DNA of 56,737 nucleotides, counting the filler, from Dugesia japonica (Eukaryota): NCBI GenBank assembly GCA_001938525.1. It is 5 parts of 5 records of this genome, joined end to end, with 100 filler letters (N's around TTAATTAATTAA, not from the genome) between each part and the next. Parts side by side here need not be neighbours in the genome. Positions count along the whole stretch, not along the records: positions 19,630 to 27,990 come from MQRL01624476.1; 4 more parts are not named here. One strand, written 5' to 3'. Positions 4,170 through 28,090 of this stretch are shown here, piece after piece; the stretch's first letter is position 1; every line of letters begins with the position of its first letter. The position numbers were made by a program, and so were the translations under genes. Below the pieces are notes generated by a model that saw nothing but the letters and a program-made list of their open reading frames with translations, did not search any database and had not been told where the DNA came from.

Positions 4170-5313
4170 AGTGCCAATAAGAGGCGTCACGTTAACCCTT
4201 ATAACAGGGACCTGACGTGTTAGCTGATCACACCAACTTACCGCACGTTGAGGCACTGGTGGAGCGAATACAGAATTTTGGTGAGCGGCGAAACTACTAT
4301 TCATGGTATGTTCCCCTGCAAAGCTTAGTAACTCGCTTCACGTATTGGCCATCACCAGCTCCACCCGGGGTAAGAGCCGGGATAAATAATTTGTTATGGA
4401 GTGTCCGGGATTCGAAAAATACAGAAAATATCGAAAATATTGAGAACACTCAGATCCCTGAAAACTAATCTTATTGGTGTCATATTTTTAATAAATGTCT
4501 CTCCGTTAAACTCATGAATAAATCCTGTTTTAGACTAAATTAAGCATTCTCGAAATTAATTTTATTTTTGTGCAATAAATTGGTTGATCGCTAAAATTTT
4601 TAGTGACAATTTTTTCTTTATAAATCCTTCTGTTTTAATCTAACTATTAACCACACTAGAGTGGTATCTAATCGTCAACGATGTTTTCTATTTAGTGGTC
4701 AGAATACGTCTTCCTAATAGCCTGCGATGATGTTATAGGTTGATCCAGAAACTACTGATGGAAAGTCACTTTGCTAAACGTAATGAGCGCGCTTTATTGC
4801 GTCACCTAACCCAACGAAATCGTTTAATTGAAAAATTAGATTTAATAGTTAAGAAACCAGGAGCATTGGCCGAACGCACCAGACAGATACTCAAAAATAA
4901 AATTAACTTTCTGAACAGGTACATCGCTGACTTGTCCTCCCAATTAGAGCTCGGGTCATGGACAAAATGGAACAGCGATGACGACGAGGACGCATTCGAT
5001 TTACTGAATGACGAGCCGCCCCAGTGACTTGATCCGGGTGCATTAAATTATATCTAATTAAAGTCTGTCGTGATGTAATAGATTTTTCTTATGCTGTAGT
5101 TATTGATATAATAAGTGAAGTATTTAAATTGGGGAATATTGAACCCGAAATAAAGGTGTATGAGTGTGTACTTCAAATAAGCGTTTGAAGTCAATTGTTC
5201 TGCACTGACAACCTAAATAGGGGCTTTAGGTAAATTCTTGAAAGGGTCCCCTTAAGGCTGTCTTTTCCCCCGGCCACATTTTTTTTCTAAACCAAACTCA
5301 GGTGGAACCCCAA

Positions 5314-9570: not shown

Positions 9571-9953
9571 TTAAATTAAGTCAAGCGCTCCTGGGTCCAA
9601 CCATTGGTCTGGATCGGTCATGGAGAATTTGAACGCGGCAATGTCGTCATTATCATCCCATTGCAATATTGTGGGGTTGTTTATCTGACGGGAGAGGTCG
9701 GCAATATACTGTTTGCGAAATTCTATTTTTCTCAACAGTATTTGTTTATTTTCTGTCTCAAGTGCTTTGGTTTGGGATGCCAGATCCGTTTGTTTTCTTA
9801 CCATCAGATCTAACTTTTTTATAAGTTGGTCACGCTGAGCTAAATGTTTGAGGATGGCCTTATCTGCCTTACGTTTTAGATGCCTCTCAANNNNNNNNNN
9901 NNNNNNNNNNNNNNNNNNNNNNCGCAAACTCGTCGGAAATATGATTCTTGGCA
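9571..9953 (-). CDS. Family 1 ORF D
   Basis: Open frame apart from an N gap, beginning ttttag|TG CCA AGA ATC. Homologous to copies 1 and 3. Confidence 0.65.
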
Positions 9954-10077
9954 CTAAAATTAAGAATTACAATTAAGTGGTCAAAACCCAATTCCGAAAA
10001 AATAAACAAAATTTAGGTAATAAATGGTTTATTAAAAGTCATAACATAGCGGATAAGGTAACTCAAGAACAGCCAGT

Positions 10078-10421
10078 TTAGGTTCCTTTATCAATCATGA
10101 GAGGAGCCAGGGGGATAGCGGCCCTCAACTTCACTATATTATCTAACAATTGATTTTCTCGTTCCTGATGGGACTTGATAATGTTGGTAAAAGTCTCAAC
10201 CTGGGACTTCCACACCCGCTCTTGATTCTGGGTAGCATCCATCTCGACTTTAAAATTTAGGCATTTTCGCTTATGGCGTTTCACCTTGGCTTCTGCCGTG
10301 GTGGTCTCTGCCTCCCACCTCCTTTTGGCTAATCGATAAAGATCCCAAGTCATCTCTTTGTCATCATTCTCTTCACGTATTTTTTTGGTAGGGGCCTGGG
10401 ACCTATTTAAAGATGAATGCA
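10078..10421 (-). CDS. Family 1 ORF C, coiled-coil protein (WDLYRLAKRRWEAE)
   Basis: Open 114-codon frame beginning tttcag|TG. Strongly similar to 26114-26400 on another scaffold. AATAAA follows the stop. Confidence 0.65.
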
Positions 10422-19524: not shown

Positions 19525-20106
19525 GTTAGNNNNNNNNNNNNNNNNNNNNNNNNNNNNNNNNNNNNNNNNNNNNTTAATTAATTAANNNNNNNNNNNNNNN
19601 NNNNNNNNNNNNNNNNNNNNNNNNNNNNNGAAGTGTGTATAAAAAAATGTTACCCGCTTATTTTAGATATTAATTATAATTAATAATAATAAAAATAAAA
19701 AAACAAATAATAAATAAAAAGTACTTTATTAAAAGATCCAAAAACTCCAATAAATCAGGATTGCCTAATTAATTGATAATAATAAAAATGAAAATCATAT
19801 TTTGTGTTTTTTGATCTTAATAAATATATATATATATATATATATACACTAATTTTTTCAAAAACATTACAAATAAAAAAAATAATAATAACAATGAAAC
19901 TTACTGATCAAACCCTACAACTCAATGATAAAGTATAATTCTATTAACAAATAAATTCCAAATTGCAATGGTGTACAATGATATTTGCTAATGAGGAAAA
20001 GGTTTTCCAAAATAAAATTTATTACAATTTATAACTTTAAATATTTATTTGATTTAATTATAAAGTCATTTTTTAAAACCGGAAATGAATTTTCGAATTA
20101 AAATGT

Positions 20107-20189
20107 ACCTCTCTATAACGTCAAACCCCCTATAATGCCACTCAGTTCCGGTCCCGATGGGTGACGTTATAGGGAGGTTCGACTTTATA
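20107..20189. mobile_element. Small Tc1/pogo-type MITE
   Basis: Inverted repeats ACCTCTCTATAACGTCA / TGACGTTATAGGGAGGT. The right end GGTTCGACTTTA resembles ...CGACTGTA termini. Confidence 0.65.
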
Positions 20190-21989
20190 AAGCTAATATG
20201 GGCCAAATACAATTTATCTTAGTAAAATATAAGGTAATTGTCGCAACCAATGAATGGACACCATCGACAGATTTGTAATGATTGAAAATCAAACGACTTA
20301 TAATGCAAAAACTTGTATTGATATTTATTTTGTAAAACTCTTCCCATTAACAAATGTCACCCCTAACTGAATTTTTGTGACAGAACTTAAATTTCAATAA
20401 TTTATTTAATACATGTTTTGTTATTGATACTTTCATTTGTGTACAAATTTAACGAGATATTTTAATACAAAATCATTAAAATATAATAATATTTCATCTA
20501 AACAAATAATTTTCATGATGTTTTGAAGCTTATTGATTTCTGATATTAATCAAAAAAGTCAAAAATTCGAAATATCAAAAACAAAAAAAAATTGACCGAA
20601 GCTTTTATTTTAATGAATTCTGAAAAACGATCAATAGTTACGTCCAACATTTATTCTCTCAATAATTATAATTGTAAAATTATTGATTTCTGTTTAATAC
20701 AGTTTACTCTCTATTTTTTTCCATAGAGGTTTTGAATTTCTTTTATATTTTATTTTTATTTAAAAATCTACTTTTATGTTCTTCGAAGGCTCGAAATTTA
20801 GATTTAAACATTCTAGAGTACATTAATTAAATTATTTTCGATTTGCACACACGAGCACAGGGTTGTGAACCATTTTCTTACAGGGTAAACTGTATAATTA
20901 TAAATAATTCATCTTCGAACCGTATTTTGTTTTGCAATACTTGTTTAATATTTTTTGATATTAATCATGAAGTCAATTTTATTAGAACTTTTTATAGATC
21001 AATTATAATTATTTAATAAAAAACAATATTTAAAAAAATATCTACATTGTTACAAATAATTATGAGTTATCTATGGATATTGATTATCTTTCGAAAAACA
21101 TAAAATTTGATTAAAAAATAATAAATCTAGTACAATAAAGGTCAAAATATTCGATTAACATTCTCATTGAATTGTAATTTGATAGTTTTCAAGGTACCAG
21201 TGAGTCATTAATATAGGTAATGATAATTAAACGAGATAATTTTATATTGTTTAGATTGTAACAATCATTGACAAAATAATTTGAAACATGAATAATAATT
21301 AATAAAATACTTGTTAAAAATTAACCAGTTAAATATTAATCTAAAATTACTATTCACCAACATTTTAAGATTAAAATATTAGATANNNNNNNNNNNNNNN
21401 NNNNNNNNNNNNNNNNNNNNNNNNNNNNNNNNNNNNNNNNNNNNNNNNNNNNNNNNNNNNNNNNNNNNNNNNNNNNNNNNNNNNNNNNNNNNNNNNNNNN
21501 NNNNNNNNNNNNNNNNNNNNNNNNNNNNNNNNNNNNNNNNNNNNNNNNNNNNNNNNNNGTATTAAACAAGTTTTCATTATTAAAAAAAATATGATTTTTA
21601 ATTCAATATTTCTTTTTCGATAAAAATTAGTAATTGAGCTATAATTAGTGGTGAGCTATAGGGGGCTCGCGCGAGGCCTTTATTAAACTTATTTGATAAT
21701 TTGGGAGCCTCTTGTTACTTCAAGATTTTTTTTAAAAATTTATTATAAAAATTAATTTTTTTATGATGCAACGTCTTTTCATTTTTCAGTTCATTGTTTA
21801 TGTTGATTATTTATGAACTGATTACATTTACAATTGGCATTTCATAATTGTTTAAAGATAATTGTGAAATTAAAAGTGTATATATGTATTAGTATACTGT
21901 TTAAATGCATTCTTTATATTTCCATCATTTGCGCATAATAAGAAAATAAATATAAATAAAGAATGCCGCAAATCAATATTACCAAATTT

Positions 21990-22900
21990 AATTGAAATAG
22001 TAAATCAGAATGAAATGTTAACATTTTGGTGAAAAATAATTGACCAATGTCTGATTTACCGAATTTAATAAAACTTTAAATTAAAGATCGTGTCACTCTA
22101 GGATTATCAATGCATTCTAAATTTACAGAAATTCGAATAGTAGAACATATTGCACAGCAAATTAGATTAGAAATGTTCTCCAAAGTAATAGATAAAATCT
22201 GCAAAATTTCTGCAATAATAGATGAATTGACAACATTATNNNNNNNNNNNNNNNNNNNNNNNNNNNNNNNNNNNNNNNNNNNNNNNNNNGAAAATCAGTA
22301 TTTTAGTTATTTATCACCAAATGAGCTTAGTGAACCATGTATGATATTTGTAGATCTTGTAGAATTATAAAATACTACTTCTATAGTTACTACATTAAAT
22401 ACATATGAAAGATAGATTAATGCAACAAAGTAATTTCAAACTTAAAAATGCAATTAATGATGATGAATTTTTAATGTTTGCGATCTTGAAAATAGAAAAT
22501 GGAAGAAGTCACGTGTCCATGACCAGAAGGGGTAAATAGAATAATATCCTTGAATTACATTTTGAAATATGAAATTAATTTCAACGATTTTCGAGATTTT
22601 GTAGAAATGGCTTTAACTTGAAAATTAAAAAATGAAATTGCCAGCACCATTAAAAAAGTCAAAGTAATAATGGGCATTATCGCAGTTAGTAGCGTTGAGT
22701 ATGAACGAGCCATCAGCGCAATGAATAATATAGTAACAATAAAAAGACCGTCATTGATTATAAAACATGTATCTGACTTAATGGCCATTTGTTTAAATGG
22801 GATATCCTTTAATGATTTTGGCCAAGTTCCATGTTTCAAATCTTATTAAGAAAAATCATCGCTCGGTTATTCAACCTCCTAGAAAATCATAACATAAGAA
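21990..22900 (+). mobile_element. hAT transposase remnant (KIAA1586/ZNF862-like)
   Basis: 'ISAIIDELTT' (first catalytic D) and the C-terminal dimerisation-like 'AVSSVEYERAISAMN..KRPSL..HVSDLM'. Many stops. Confidence 0.75.
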
Positions 22901-23824
22901 TGGGAAAAAATGTTTGGCAACATTTAGAATAAGTCTTTTTTATTTGAATTTATAATTGTTTTGTTCAAAAATTTTATTGTTTTTATTTATTATTGTTAAA
23001 TTTTTCTTTATTTTTATATTATTTATTTATATTTATGAATTAAATCATTCAAATTATAATAATTTATCAATATACAATGTTGTTTACTCTTCCAAACTAG
23101 AAGCGAGTCCTTTGTTAAAATTTTTATAGTTCACAACTGGTTACATGTCTGAGATTTTCATGTTGATCTTTTGAATCAGAGTTGATTCGAGTAGGGTAAA
23201 ATTAAAATTTTAAAGTTAACTATATCAAATTAATATGAAAATTACTTAAGTAAAGTATTTATAACATTAACGGGTTGTATTTCAGTGTTATCAGAACACA
23301 GTGCTCCACACTAATCTTAGATTAAATATTCTTTATAGTATTGATTATTAATCAATTATTAATTTAAATTTCGTAATTTTTGAAATTATTTTCAAAGATT
23401 TTATTTTATTGATCGAAAAGTAAAAATGCGAGGATAATTTTTTAATTAAAAATTTAATTCACTGAAACACAAATCTAGAGTTCATATTATATTAATAATA
23501 TTTCTTTAAAAGAGACACCAAATTCCATTTAATTGGCTACCGAAATCGTGTTAAATAAATGCATTTAGAATTGGAAAATAATATTTAATATCAAAATGAA
23601 ATATTTTAAAACTTTTTAAAAAATTAATCAAAATTGCAATTTGATTTGCAGTAAACTCCGTATAAAAGCAACACAATTAAGAAGAAAAACATGCTTAAAG
23701 AGAATTGTTTTCGGTCCAGTTTTATGTAATTGGAAAAGTTTACATACAAAATACTCAGTGTAAAGAGCAACTCCGCTTATATAGAACAAAAATCGCCGAT
23801 CCTACTGATTTTTCTCGTAATTAG

Positions 23825-24548
<724 letters not shown>

Positions 24549-26113
24549 TAATTCCTAGGCAAAAAAGTCTTATCCGAGTGCTTTATTATATTTCTGTGTA
24601 ATAAAAATAATAAAATTAATAATAATTAGTTCAATTTTCAATTCGATTGTCGCAAAGTTTGGAATGTTGATGTGCAATATTTGAATGATGTGAGAGATTA
24701 ACAATTTGATTTTCAACATGATTAAATAAACAGTTATTGACTTGTCTTGTCGTCTATATTAATGGTAATGACTAAGAAATACCGCGTAATAAAATTAATA
24801 CCGTATCTTAATTACATTGTTATTTTGTCGACAATCAATATGCTGTAAAATGGGTGTAAAGTAGTAGTGTCTGTCATACAGAGATAATGGTGACTAATGA
24901 AATGCACAAAATATTCTTTCTTGTATCTGGTTTTTACACGCTACTGTAAATAACTATTCTAATTTCAAATGTAAAATTATGTAATTATTTTTTGAATAAA
25001 TGATTTTTTTTCTTTTTTTTGGTGAAATATTTTATTGTATGTCTAAATTTTCCATATTTTTTGTAATAAATTAATTTTACTTCAAAGAGAACAGTCAAAG
25101 TAATATAATTTTTTTTAGAAATTATTAGATAATTGTAGAACATTATTTCTATTTTCTGAGTAGATAGGTAGTAGCACTCCAACTCACCCCCCAGGAGATA
25201 ATTTTTTCAGGCCGACTTTTCATGAAAATTTATTTGAAAATTTTTAAAAACTTAGATTTCGAGAATTTTGTCCAATACACAAGCACTCTCAAAAGAACTT
25301 CTTTCTTTCCTCCTAGCTTTAATCATCATTCAAAGCAAAATGTTTACTATGATTAAGAATATAATATTTAAAAGTCAATATTACTTATTCACAACAAATA
25401 AAATGAAACTAATACTAGAATTCTCACCGAGTAGACTTGATATTATAATAATATTAGACACAAATTAAATAACAAAAGATTTTCAAACAACAATTTATTT
25501 AAATTAAATCTTGTTTCTATCCATCTGATTGAGCTGTTTTGAACTTGTGAGTTGAAAGTAATAAAAATTCATTAATTTCAATGAATAAATAACAAATCAT
25601 AACCTTTACATTATCTGGATAAACTTATTCGCTACGGTTTGAACTACTATAATGTTTGAACTACTATATAAAATTGAAGGTGGCATCGTCGTCGTCATTG
25701 TTCCATTGCTCCCAAGTTGGTGGTTGAGTCGGCGAGAGAGATCCGATATATATTGCTTGAGGAAGTCAATTTTCCTCTGCAGCAACAATTTGTTTTCGTC
25801 TTCTAACGCTTTGATCTGCCTTGCCAGGTCATTTTGTTTTTTCACAATCTGATCAAGTTTCTTGATCCGACAATCTCGTTGGTTCAAATGTTTGATCAGT
25901 GCTTAATCGGTTTTCCGCTTTAGATGACGTTCTAATAGTAGGCAGCGCAATATGCGATGGCATCTGCGGATACTATTGGGAAAGGTGATGCGGGGCACTA
26001 AAAGAAATTAAATTAGCATATAGGCAACTTAGCAAAAATTATCAAACGCTACAACAATAACTGATTTCACAAGAACGCTTAAATGAAACATTTATTTATG
26101 AAAACGAGTAGGG

Positions 26114-26400
26114 TCATGTCCGAGGGGTTTCAGTGCTTTTCTCAATCATCAAAGGCTCGAGAGGGATCCTTTCCCTGAGATGTAAAACATCATCAACCAG
26201 TTTATTCTCTCGGTCATGGCTGGACTGGATTATTTCCGCAAAGGACTCGACCTGTTTTTTCCATACCCGCTCCTGCAAGTGGGAGGCCTCGGCTTCCTTT
26301 TTAAAGGCGATACACTTTTTCTTGTACCTAGATACATTACTATTTGCGGCGGCTATTTCTGCCTCCCATCGTCGCTTTGCAAGACGGTAGAGGTCCCAAC
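26114..26400 (-). CDS. Family 1 ORF C, coiled-coil protein
   Basis: WDLYRLAKRRWEAE...QERVWK.QVE.F...PL.PLMI shared with 10078-10421. The start is uncertain. Confidence 0.65.
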
Positions 26401-26522
26401 TAATAAAATAATACTTAGTATAACTCCGATTACTAATACTAAGTTCTAGATCACCCAAATCGTCTTGATATTTTAGAACAGGACAACTAGATAATTTTAT
26501 TATACGTCACACATATAAATCA

Positions 26523-26876
26523 CTAAAAAGGAGTGGATAAATCCGGCGCGGGTGCAGTATTTTCCGAGTCTTCGCTACCTGAGGGTTCCCTTATTCCCCA
26601 GAGTAGGTTAGAGGGAAAGGCCTGTACCGCGGGCACTGGAGTTGGAGTGGGAGGCCGATACTGAAAGGATGTTGCAATGGTGCGATTAGGGACTGCCCAG
26701 GCTTGGTATCGCTGACGCTCGCCAAAGTCTCTTATGCGCTCGACGATGGACTCTACAGGAGGCAAACTAGATCTGTCGGCCAAAATGCACGCGTCCCGAT
26801 TGTGGGGTTTGTGGTGTCGTCGGAAGATTATTCGACGAGTTCTTCTATCCACTATCCTTTCCAATATTGATTCCAT
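26523..26876 (-). CDS. Family 1 ORF B, 117-aa Arg/Pro-rich protein
   Basis: ATG 1 nt after the tttatag acceptor. Conserved with 4180-4468 (LAD..LP.VE..VERI..FGER..Y..W.VP; NLLW). Confidence 0.7.
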   Translation of the reverse strand: MESILERIVDRRTRRIIFRRHHKPHNRDACILADRSSLPPVESIVERIRDFGERQRYQAWAVPNRTIATSFQYRPPTPTPVPAVQAFPSNLLWGIREPSGSEDSENTAPAPDLSTPF

Positions 26877-27025
26877 TCTATAAATAACCGAAATTTTGTT
26901 TAAATTATAATATATAATTTCCTTTTAAATTAATTAATGGTAACAGAAATAAACAACAAATAGATTTAATCAAATCATCAGTTTATTTTAGACAATTAAC
27001 AGTAATTGGCAGATTACACTCCTGC

Positions 27026-27220
27026 TTAGAAAGGCGTACTCTTCGCATCTAGATCTACTGGAGTCACTGAGGGGAACATCTCCGCGAAACAGCAAAGATC
27101 TGTCTCATCCGGGTGTTCAATTCTTCCCTTAGTTAATAGATGGGCAATGAACTGTCTTAATCGAGCAGTTTGACGTCGTCGTTTTATCCATTGGAGAGTA
27201 CGGCGCAATTCGGGTGTCAT
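27026..27220 (-). CDS. Family 1 ORF A, 64-aa basic protein
   Basis: ATG 3 nt after the ttattcag acceptor. GC-richer than the flanks. AATAAA downstream. Confidence 0.55.
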   Translation of the reverse strand: MTPELRRTLQWIKRRRQTARLRQFIAHLLTKGRIEHPDETDLCCFAEMFPSVTPVDLDAKSTPF

Positions 27221-27760
27221 GAACTGAATAAAGACAACAAATATTAAATGATGACTCCTACAAAAAAAATTTCATTACTATTGCCGGCTTTTATTAATAG
27301 GACGACTCGTTCCATTTCCACGATACTAGTTTACTGAATAATTTTAATTTAGACTCATTGGTCAATATTAGAATCTTAATAACATTTTTAACATTCATCA
27401 TAAAGATAGTAGGGCTAAACGTAGTATTTTTTTATCTTACCAGGGATAAACGTCACCTTGAGCATGTTAATAATAATGGTAATAATATAACGGATCATAA
27501 TTTCAACGATGACACTACCCATATGGCCAATAGTAATGTTCATAACTACCACATTGAGAATGATTTTAACAGTAATCAGGACGATGATCATACTAATGAT
27601 AGTACTGTTAAAGATAGTAAAAATAATAGTTGAATTATTTCAAGTTTACTGGTACTTAAAGTAGTATTAATACTGTTAATTTCGTCAACCATAACCATAA
27701 AATTAGCACTCCCAACCATAAGGATAATATCGGTAATATTAATAGTCTTAGTATTGATAG

Positions 27761-27940
27761 TGTTGGGGTTTCACCTGAGTTGGAAAAGGTGACTGGGGAA
27801 AAACAGTCCTCAGGGGAACCCTTTCAAGAATTTAAACCCTACCGTCCCTATGGTAGGTTTTCAGTTTATTGTGGTTGACTTTTCTCTTGATGGAAAGTTC
27901 TCACCAATAAACCTTCTGTTCGGGTTCTATATTTTCCCAA
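27761..27940 (+). other. Family 1 structured terminal module (third copy of the module)
   Basis: Homologous to 9319-9505 and to the reverse complement of 5131-5315. Begins TGTTGGGG. Confidence 0.85.
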
Positions 27941-28090
27941 TAATATTTAAACTATTTTAATTAACATTTAATATTACGAAAAGAATTTAANNNNNNNNNN
28001 NNNNNNNNNNNNNNNNNNNNNNNNNNNNNNNNNNTTAATTAATTAANNNNNNNNNNNNNNNNNNNNNNNNNNNNNNNNNNNNNNNNNNNN

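What the first reader, a model, noticed from the sequence alone, without database searches (positions are those of the whole stretch)
25670..27250. Unclassified repeated element carrying an operon-like array of small genes
Seen: four short co-oriented ORFs (A-B-C-D). Homologs recur at 4170-5057 (B, D) and 9571-10421 (C, D) on an independent scaffold, with protein conservation despite DNA divergence. Intergenic spacers of ~60-230 bp hold AATAAA after the stop, then a U-rich tract, then a pyrimidine-AG acceptor before the next ORF. I recognise no transposase, RT or known domain in these ORFs. Inference: this is the accessory-gene arm of a high-copy mobile or virus-like element, expressed by alternative terminal-exon splicing or trans-splicing. 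Known analogies are nematode operons, the adenovirus late unit, Terminons, and ORFs in the multi-kb LTRs of the giant planarian Burro retroelements.
Basis: partly seen in the sequence, partly recalled or inferred. Interest (0 to 1): 0.9.

Follow-up and report, generated by a model that had tools for sequence, protein, structure and literature searches.

The report
Array of small spliced-and-polyadenylated ORF cassettes
Next to an ordinary haem-synthesis gene lies a head-to-tail row of four small reading frames of unknown function, each with a splice-acceptor-like site in front and a poly(A) signal behind; they look like separately processed mini-genes of one transcription unit, but nothing here shows that they belong to a mobile or virus-like element.

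Summary
The four co-oriented ORFs are real and lie on the minus strand at 27223-25606. They are more than chance gives: six stop-free stretches of 80 or more codons against 1.15 in shuffles.

All four units are built alike:
- an acceptor-like YAG directly before the frame;
- a GC-rich frame (39-52% GC, GC3 0.44);
- a stop, then AATAAA 17-38 nt later (106 nt for the last unit);
- a T-rich spacer that puts the next acceptor 72-110 nt after the AATAAA.

ORF B is a real protein under purifying selection. Its only relative among about 15 billion proteins is a 94-aa ORF on a 512-bp metagenome contig, which shows the same layout. No known domain, RNA family, LTR, TIR or mobility gene is present in the piece. 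No credible GT-AG chain joins the frames into one gene.

Two units are incomplete. C has no start codon, and D has one break.

My best reading is a polycistron-like array of terminal-exon cassettes, each spliced to a leader and polyadenylated separately. Its codon composition is unlike that of the neighbouring host gene CPOX. The "high-copy element" claim could not be tested, because the other copies lie outside the piece.

The parts
27026..27223 (-). Cassette A. The acceptor-like site ends at 27224 and the first exon base is 27223. The ATG-to-stop ORF of 64 aa runs 27220..27026. The protein is basic and predicted to have three helices.
   Evidence: Pfam and PDB gave only sub-threshold HTH-like hits, and the fold search found nothing.
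26878..27025 (-). A-B spacer of 148 nt at about 21% GC. AATAAA lies at 26987..26982, followed by a T-rich tract (47% T) up to the acceptor-like site before B.
26523..26877 (-). Cassette B. The first exon base is 26877, 1 nt before the ATG. The ORF of 117 aa runs 26876..26523. It is the only unit with a relative elsewhere.
   Evidence: P0002 matches with E 8e-7 in a library of 1.84 billion proteins and SW z 21; 21 of 34 identical degenerate residues use different codons.
26400..26522 (-). B-C spacer. AATAAA lies at 26501..26496. The best acceptor-like site gives a first exon base of 26399, 102 nt after the AATAAA.
26114..26399 (-). Cassette C. This is the GC-rich part of a frame that is stop-free from 26506 to its stop at 26116..26114. 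It has no in-frame ATG near its start. The protein is helical and charged.
   Evidence: Only sub-threshold coiled-coil-type Pfam hits, and no homologue.
25998..26113 (-). C-D spacer of 116 nt. AATAAA lies at 26096..26091, followed by a T-rich tract (49% T) and an acceptor-like site 99 nt after the AATAAA.
25606..25997 (-). Cassette D, given as one part because it is broken. It is a GC-rich block from the acceptor-like site to the stop. No intact ATG-to-stop frame covers it: there is one break, which is either one in-frame stop or, reading from the only ATG, one frameshift. It carries a leucine-zipper-like helical segment.
   Evidence: Only sub-threshold TSC22/bZIP/coiled-coil hits, and the metagenome scan found nothing.
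25494..25499 (-). The first AATAAA after cassette D, 106 nt past its stop.
27290..27431 (-). Possible tail of a fifth, decayed cassette upstream of A. It is a short open frame whose stop overlaps an AATAAA (27295..27290). A T-rich tract follows, and the acceptor of A lies 72 nt later.
23840..24548 (+). Neighbour: the last three exons of the host gene for coproporphyrinogen III oxidase (23840-23965, 24009-24410, 24462-24548), with introns of 43 and 51 nt and AATAAA at 24600. It converges on the array; the two stops are 1057 nt apart.

Best explanation
The block 27223-25606 (minus strand) is a head-to-tail array of four small coding cassettes built to one plan. Each has a 3' splice-acceptor-like site directly in front of the frame and a GC-rich frame of about 64-130 codons. 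Each then has a stop and an AATAAA shortly after, followed by a T-rich spacer of about 100 nt up to the next acceptor.

I think it works as one transcription unit whose precursor is cut and polyadenylated after each cassette. Each cassette would get its 5' end by splicing to a leader. The leader could be a shared upstream exon (alternative terminal exons) or a spliced leader added in trans (operon-like). One unit would then give several small proteins.

Shown:
- the layout and its statistics;
- that B encodes a protein under purifying selection;
- that a distant relative has the same layout.

Inferred:
- the splicing and polyadenylation themselves;
- the common precursor;
- that the array is, or derives from, a lineage-restricted repeated element rather than old host genes. 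This rests on composition and on its absence from annotated proteomes.

This copy is partly defective: C has no start codon and D has one break.
For: Layout and signals:
- ORFs exceed chance.
- AATAAA lies 17-38 nt after 3 of 4 stops, and 6 nt after the stop in L001. Chance per 45-nt window is about 0.17, so 4 of 5 has a binomial p of about 0.004.
- Acceptor-like YAG sites lie 3 and 1 nt before the ATGs of A and B, each with P about 0.02.
- The distance from AATAAA to the next acceptor is 72, 110, 102 and 99 nt in the window and 99 nt in L001, across tracts of 44-49% T.

Not one gene:
- No in-frame GT-AG chain with decent sites joins the four frames. The longest spliced ORF from the ATG of A is 120 codons and skips most of B and C.

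B is a real protein:
- B is 35-38% identical to P0002 from residue 1, with synonymous sites saturated.

Composition:
- L001 repeats the pattern of 17-23% GC flanks, a 48% GC ORF, a spacer, an acceptor and a new 47% GC block.
- GC3 is 0.44 against 0.26 in CPOX, p 2e-5.
Against: - There is no RNA evidence of any kind.
- C and D have no start codon of their own, so as they stand they cannot be independent cistrons.
- No leader exon is visible in the 770 nt upstream, and no good donor there ends in A.
- A flatworm-type spliced leader ending in AUG (PMC9851317) would be out of frame for B, D and the L001 ORF.
- The acceptor before the L001 ORF is weak by my pyrimidine count. Its apparent AG could simply be part of a changed start codon.
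- Only one host gene was available for the composition contrast.
- Repetition in the genome was not testable.
- A, C and D have no relatives at all. C was searched in the word-index protein search and D only in the metagenome scan.
Confidence: 0.4

Rival explanations
1. It is an ordinary host locus: a cluster or operon of lineage-specific small host genes, not part of any mobile or virus-like element. It uses the same per-gene acceptor and poly(A) signals.
For: - It lies 1 kb from, and converges with, a normal host gene, in normal AT-rich intergenic DNA.
- The piece holds no mobility gene, LTR, TIR, tRNA or ribozyme.
- The signals are those of the host's own RNA processing.
Against: - GC3 is far from that of the neighbouring host gene.
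- No annotated protein in any genome matches B, which has only one metagenome fragment as a relative.
- Two of the four units are incomplete.
Confidence: 0.25
2. It is one ordinary multi-exon gene on the minus strand. The 'ORFs' are exons that look separate only because AT-rich introns are full of stops, and the AATAAA and acceptor placements are by-products of AT-rich introns.
For: - The host has very short, AT-rich introns with weak donors that score 5 of 8 on my scale.
- C and D lack start codons, as internal exons would.
- One in-frame B-to-C junction exists: a phase-1 donor scoring 5 of 8, an AAG-type acceptor and a 115-nt intron.
Against: - No chain through all four frames exists with decent sites.
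- The strong acceptors are not in phase with any decent donor.
- The B-like ORF in L001 ends in a stop plus AATAAA at the same place, and the candidate donor inside B is not conserved there.
- The ATGs of A and B lie 3 and 1 nt behind acceptors.
Confidence: 0.15
3. It is a dead remnant: fragments of a once longer gene, from a host pseudogene or an old insertion, now broken up. The signals are chance and the block has no present function.
For: - C has no start and the D unit has one break.
- A possible decayed fifth unit lies upstream.
- A, C and D have no relatives.
Against: - Frames of 98-133 stop-free codons at 39-52% GC would not last in a genome whose neutral DNA is about 20% GC.
- The signals are non-random.
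- The same layout and GC contrast are kept in a relative at 36% identity.
Confidence: 0.12

Closest known systems
Spliced-leader-resolved operons of nematodes (Caenorhabditis elegans type), also reported in flatworms, tunicates and chaetognaths
   Same: Both have co-oriented genes a hundred or so bases apart. In both, a poly(A) signal of the upstream gene is followed by a U-rich tract and a 3' splice site just before the next start codon.
   Different: - Operon genes are normal-sized, unrelated, conserved host genes, each with its own AUG. Here the frames are 64-130 codons, have no known domains, and two lack a start.
- The organism has a haem-synthesis gene (CPOX) with introns, so by my own knowledge it is unlikely to be a nematode.
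- No spliced leader is known for it.
Accessory ORFs of retrovirus-like elements expressed from spliced messages (ORF3 of bdelloid LTR retrotransposons, accessory ORFs of planarian Burro elements; PMC5408684, PMC6431247)
   Same: Both are small extra ORFs without assignable function, some helical or coiled-coil-like. They are co-oriented and expressed by splicing from a leader.
   Different: Those ORFs sit between pol and an LTR and share one poly(A) site in the LTR. Here each unit has its own AATAAA, and the piece holds no gag, pol or LTR.
Terminons (giant Penelope-like elements of bdelloid rotifers; PMC6431247)
   Same: Both have many co-oriented ORFs of unknown function, including coiled-coil ones, in an AT-rich genome with short introns.
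   Different: The piece has no reverse transcriptase, hammerhead ribozyme or telomeric repeats, and the ORFs here are much smaller.
Leader-to-body splicing in nuclear DNA viruses
   Same: The idea is the same: one promoter and leader serve several downstream coding bodies, with several poly(A) sites.
   Different: This is an analogy only. No protein, fold or domain here resembles any viral protein.

Membership tests
Spliced-leader operon (nematode type) | Co-oriented genes, with the upstream gene's poly(A) signal about 100 nt before the next gene's 3' splice site | tested here: met
   72, 110, 102 and 99 nt in the window and 99 nt in L001; AATAAA statistics
Spliced-leader operon (nematode type) | U-rich element in the intercistronic region | tested here: inconclusive
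   The spacers are 44-49% T on the coding strand, but no defined motif was tested and the whole genome is AT-rich.
Spliced-leader operon (nematode type) | Every cistron is a complete ORF with its own start codon | tested here: not met
   A and B have ATGs. C has none and the D unit has none in its long frame.
Spliced-leader operon (nematode type) | Mature mRNAs carry a spliced leader | not testable with these tools
   No transcript data are available and the organism is unknown.
LTR retroelement (Gypsy/Burro type) | Long terminal repeats flanking the unit | tested here: not met
   The piece has no direct repeat longer than 60 nt, and all repeats found are low-complexity. The piece ends 770 nt upstream of A, so an LTR further out cannot be excluded.
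LTR retroelement (Gypsy/Burro type) | gag, protease, reverse transcriptase or integrase domains | tested here: not met
   Pfam found none in the ORFs of the array or in the other open frames that I submitted. Not every frame of the piece was scanned.
Penelope-like element / Terminon | Reverse transcriptase (with or without GIY-YIG), hammerhead ribozyme motif, telomeric repeats | tested here: not met
   No Pfam hit; no Rfam family at gathering score, or at E up to 1 in 24600-27990; no telomere-like tandem repeats.
Polinton/Maverick or other integrated DNA virus | Polymerase, integrase, packaging ATPase or capsid genes | tested here: not met
   No Pfam, PHROG or PDB match. Only the 8.4-kb piece was available.
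Ordinary multi-exon host gene | The frames join through in-phase GT-AG introns into one ORF | tested here: not met
   No chain with donors scoring 5 of 8 or more and YAG acceptors covers the four frames. This is a sequence-only test.
Repeated (high-copy) element | Several copies in the same genome | not testable with these tools
   The other pieces are masked and no collection of eukaryotic genomes is on hand. Within the piece there is a single copy.

The most novel reading that the evidence does not exclude
The cassettes belong to an undescribed family of mobile or virus-like elements of an AT-rich invertebrate. Its small accessory genes would be modular terminal-exon cassettes that can be shuffled between copies. 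Several of them would have no start codon of their own and would be completed to AUG only when a leader ending in A is spliced onto an exon that begins with UG. That pattern is seen at three acceptor-like sites: the D unit here, and the B-like ORF and the following block in L001.
Probability: 0.12. Interest if true: 0.75.

Novelty: new member of a known kind. Interest (0 to 1): 0.4.

Why it matters
If the layout is what it seems, this is a compact eukaryotic transcription unit that makes several unrelated small proteins by coupling splicing to internal polyadenylation. It would lie outside the nematodes, where that arrangement is best known. The protein families involved are absent from current databases. 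It would also give a handle on how small accessory genes of repeated elements are expressed in an AT-rich invertebrate genome.

If it is only a cluster of orphan host genes or one mis-read gene, it is ordinary. On the evidence available here it is a well-formed but uncharacterised locus, not a demonstrated new element.

Tried and rejected
Searches that found nothing:
- Pfam, PHROGs and PDB sequence searches of all four ORFs and their extended frames gave only sub-threshold helix or coiled-coil noise.
- AlphaFold gave low confidence for B (pLDDT 49) and for A (pLDDT 63). The fold search with A found nothing, and no fold search was run on B because the model was too poor.
- Word-index protein searches with B, C and the B+P0002 profile returned nothing beyond P0002.
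- Exact look-up of the four ORFs found none in the collection.
- Two metagenome scans (B profile, D) and one scan of bacterial and archaeal genomes found nothing.

Ideas rejected:
- P0001 is a 61-residue tandem-repeat product that matches 27 residues of B seven times. I rejected it as spurious.
- Paralogy among A-D is not significant.
- The heptad test for coiled coils is weak: D p 0.06, C not significant.
- Plus-strand ORFs in the block are shorter and not protein-like, and the homologue of B fixes the minus strand.
- A flatworm-type leader ending in AUG as the source of the missing starts is out of frame.
Full report
**What is there**

The usable piece is 19630-27990, with two N gaps at 21386-21558 and 22240-22289. 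Most of it is very AT-rich, at 12-30% GC. Two GC-richer islands stand out, at 23630-24400 and 25630-27130.

The first island is the 3' part of a host gene for coproporphyrinogen III oxidase (CPOX) on the plus strand (Pfam PF01218, E 6.6e-65 and 5.2e-16).
- Its exons are 23840-23965, 24009-24410 and 24462-24548.
- Its introns are 43 and 51 nt, and an AATAAA lies at 24600.
- So the piece is nuclear DNA of an AT-rich eukaryote with very short introns. I could not name the species.

The second island is the finding.

**The observation**

On the minus strand lie four co-oriented frames:
- A: 27220..27026, 64 aa, starts with ATG.
- B: 26876..26523, 117 aa, starts with ATG.
- C: stop-free from 26506, with its stop at 26116..26114.
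- D: a GC-rich block 25997..25606.

The block holds six stop-free stretches of 80 or more codons, against 1.15 in shuffles (p about 0.001). The four longest that do not overlap one another are all on the minus strand.

C and D have no in-frame ATG near their starts; the listed starts are TTG.

The D block has no intact ATG-to-stop frame. It has one break, which is either one in-frame stop or, reading from its only ATG, one frameshift.

**One building plan**

*Poly(A) signals.* AATAAA follows the stops of A, B and C by 38, 21 and 17 nt, and D by 106 nt. In the AT-rich non-coding DNA of the same piece, a 45-nt window holds an AATAAA with probability about 0.17.

*Acceptor-like sites.* Sites of the form pyrimidine tract plus YAG end 3 nt before the ATG of A, 1 nt before the ATG of B, and at the start of the GC-rich D block. 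Such sites occur once per 264 nt in the AT-rich DNA, so a given 5-nt window holds one with P about 0.02.

*Spacing.* The distance from each AATAAA to the next acceptor is regular: 72 nt (a signal upstream of A), 110, 102 and 99 nt. The tracts between are 44-49% T. Judged by GC content and by the best acceptor, cassette C really begins at 26399. The true spacers are then 148, 123 and 116 nt.

**Is it one ordinary gene?**

I listed all in-phase GT..AG pairs between neighbouring frames. I then searched for the longest spliced ORF using donors scoring at least 5 of 8, which is the strength of the two CPOX donors, and YAG acceptors with a pyrimidine tract.

No chain runs through the four frames. 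From the ATG of A the best chain is 120 codons and skips most of B and C.

The only tolerable junction between neighbours is B to C: a phase-1 donor scoring 5 of 8, an AAG-type acceptor and a 115-nt intron. The exons were searched apart, by reference.

This is a sequence-only test and cannot replace cDNA.

**Relatives**

Nothing significant turned up in Pfam, PHROGs or PDB. The four exact sequences are not in the 15-billion-protein collection. Word-index searches with B and C found nothing.

The exhaustive HMMER search with B found two proteins:
- P0001 is a tandem-repeat product that matches 27 residues of B seven times. I take it as spurious.
- P0002 is a true relative. It is 94 aa, 35-38% identical to B from residue 1, with E 8e-7 in 1.84 billion proteins and a Smith-Waterman z of 21.

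Of 34 identical degenerate residues between B and P0002, 21 are written with different codons, and nucleotide identity is 0.51. The protein has therefore been conserved while silent sites saturated.

P0002 comes from a single 512-bp metagenome contig, L001. A profile search and scans of metagenomes and prokaryotic genomes added nothing more.

**The relative has the same layout**

L001 shows the following:
- flanks of 17-23% GC around an ORF of 48% GC (GC3 0.41);
- an AG directly before the frame;
- AATAAA 6 nt after the stop;
- a T-rich spacer;
- 99 nt after the AATAAA, a strong acceptor followed by a new 47% GC block that runs off the contig.

With L001 included, 4 of 5 stops have an AATAAA within 45 nt, a binomial p of about 0.004. 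The candidate donor inside B is not conserved in L001, which argues that B ends at its stop.

**Composition**

GC3 of A-D is 0.44 (range 0.39-0.48), against 0.26 in the 204 codons of CPOX (Fisher p 2e-5). The same contrast persists in the distant relative.

Either these frames are under codon-level constraint, or they do not share the host's long-term mutational history. This is the main hint, and an indirect one, for a mobile or foreign origin.

Against that origin, the piece has no mobility gene, no LTR or TIR pair, no tRNA, no Rfam family including hammerhead ribozymes, and no telomere-like repeats. The claim of other copies in the genome lies outside the piece and could not be tested.

**The proteins**

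- A is basic and is predicted, at low confidence (pLDDT 63), to form three helices. Its HTH-like hits are sub-threshold and the fold search found nothing.
- B models poorly (pLDDT 49).
- C and D are charged and helical. D has a leucine-zipper-like stretch, but the heptad test is weak.
- A-D are not detectably paralogous.
- A and B nevertheless end in the same four residues, S-T-P-F, preceded by D-L and written with different codons. I cannot explain this.

**How it most likely works**

My preferred reading, at confidence 0.4, is that one precursor RNA runs through the array. Cleavage and polyadenylation would occur after each cassette. Each cassette would be spliced at its acceptor to a leader, which is either a shared upstream exon or a trans-spliced leader.

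The layout and spacing are the part that is shown. The RNA processing is inferred.

Points that do not fit:
- C and D lack starts, so this copy is partly defective or they depend on what is spliced on.
- At three acceptor-like sites that lack an ATG, the exon begins with T-G. These are the D unit, the L001 ORF and the following L001 block. For the first two, T-G is in the long frame, as if the leader supplied the first base of a start codon.
- No donor ending in A is visible in the 770 nt upstream.
- A flatworm-type leader ending in AUG (PMC9851317) would be out of frame.

Rival readings are a cluster or operon of orphan host genes (0.25), one ordinary gene with splice sites I could not model (0.15), and a dead remnant (0.12).

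**Comparison with what is known**

The layout is closest to nematode-type operons resolved by spliced leaders. The spacing criterion is met. The criterion that every cistron has its own start is not met, and the leader cannot be tested.

It shares only general traits with accessory ORFs of Burro elements, with ORF3s of bdelloid LTR elements, and with Terminons (PMC6431247, PMC5408684). Their defining features were looked for here and not found.

I therefore file it under none of these. I rate it as a new member of a known kind of arrangement, carrying new protein families.

- I did not scan the viral contig collection with these ORFs, because a hit could fetch a virus of an animal (see referred steps).
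- L002, a metagenome contig, was fetched only to check the spurious hit P0001 and was not used further.

Noticed in passing
window 23840-24548 (+): The last three exons of a host coproporphyrinogen III oxidase gene, with introns of only 43 and 51 nt and AATAAA at 24600. GC3 is 0.26. The gene converges on the ORF array.
   Followed up: yes
window about 22080-22850 (+): Open frames that look like a decayed hAT-type transposase remnant, interrupted by an N gap. The Pfam hAT dimerisation region matches with E 0.015, below the cut-off.
   Followed up: partly
window 27026-27040 and 26523-26545 (-): ORFs A and B are otherwise unrelated, yet both end in D-L...S-T-P-F before the stop, written with different codons. 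C ends in a loosely similar K-S-T-x-T-P.
   Followed up: partly
window 25997 (-); L001 76 and 465 (+): At three acceptor-like sites without an ATG of their own, the first two exon bases are T-G. For two of them T-G is in the frame of the long ORF, as if the first base of a start codon were supplied by splicing.
   Followed up: partly
window 27290-27431 (-): A short open frame whose stop overlaps an AATAAA, followed by a T-rich tract and the acceptor of A 72 nt later. It may be the tail of a fifth, decayed cassette.
   Followed up: no
window 27660-27875: A GC-richer island with a 72-codon open frame on the plus strand and splice-like sites on both strands. It has no Pfam hit and may be an exon of a neighbouring gene.
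   Followed up: partly
L002 5001-9494 (+): A metagenome contig with a long tandem array of a 61-residue unit, called as proteins of 423 and 1070 aa. It came up only as a spurious, repeat-inflated hit to 27 residues of B.
   Followed up: partly
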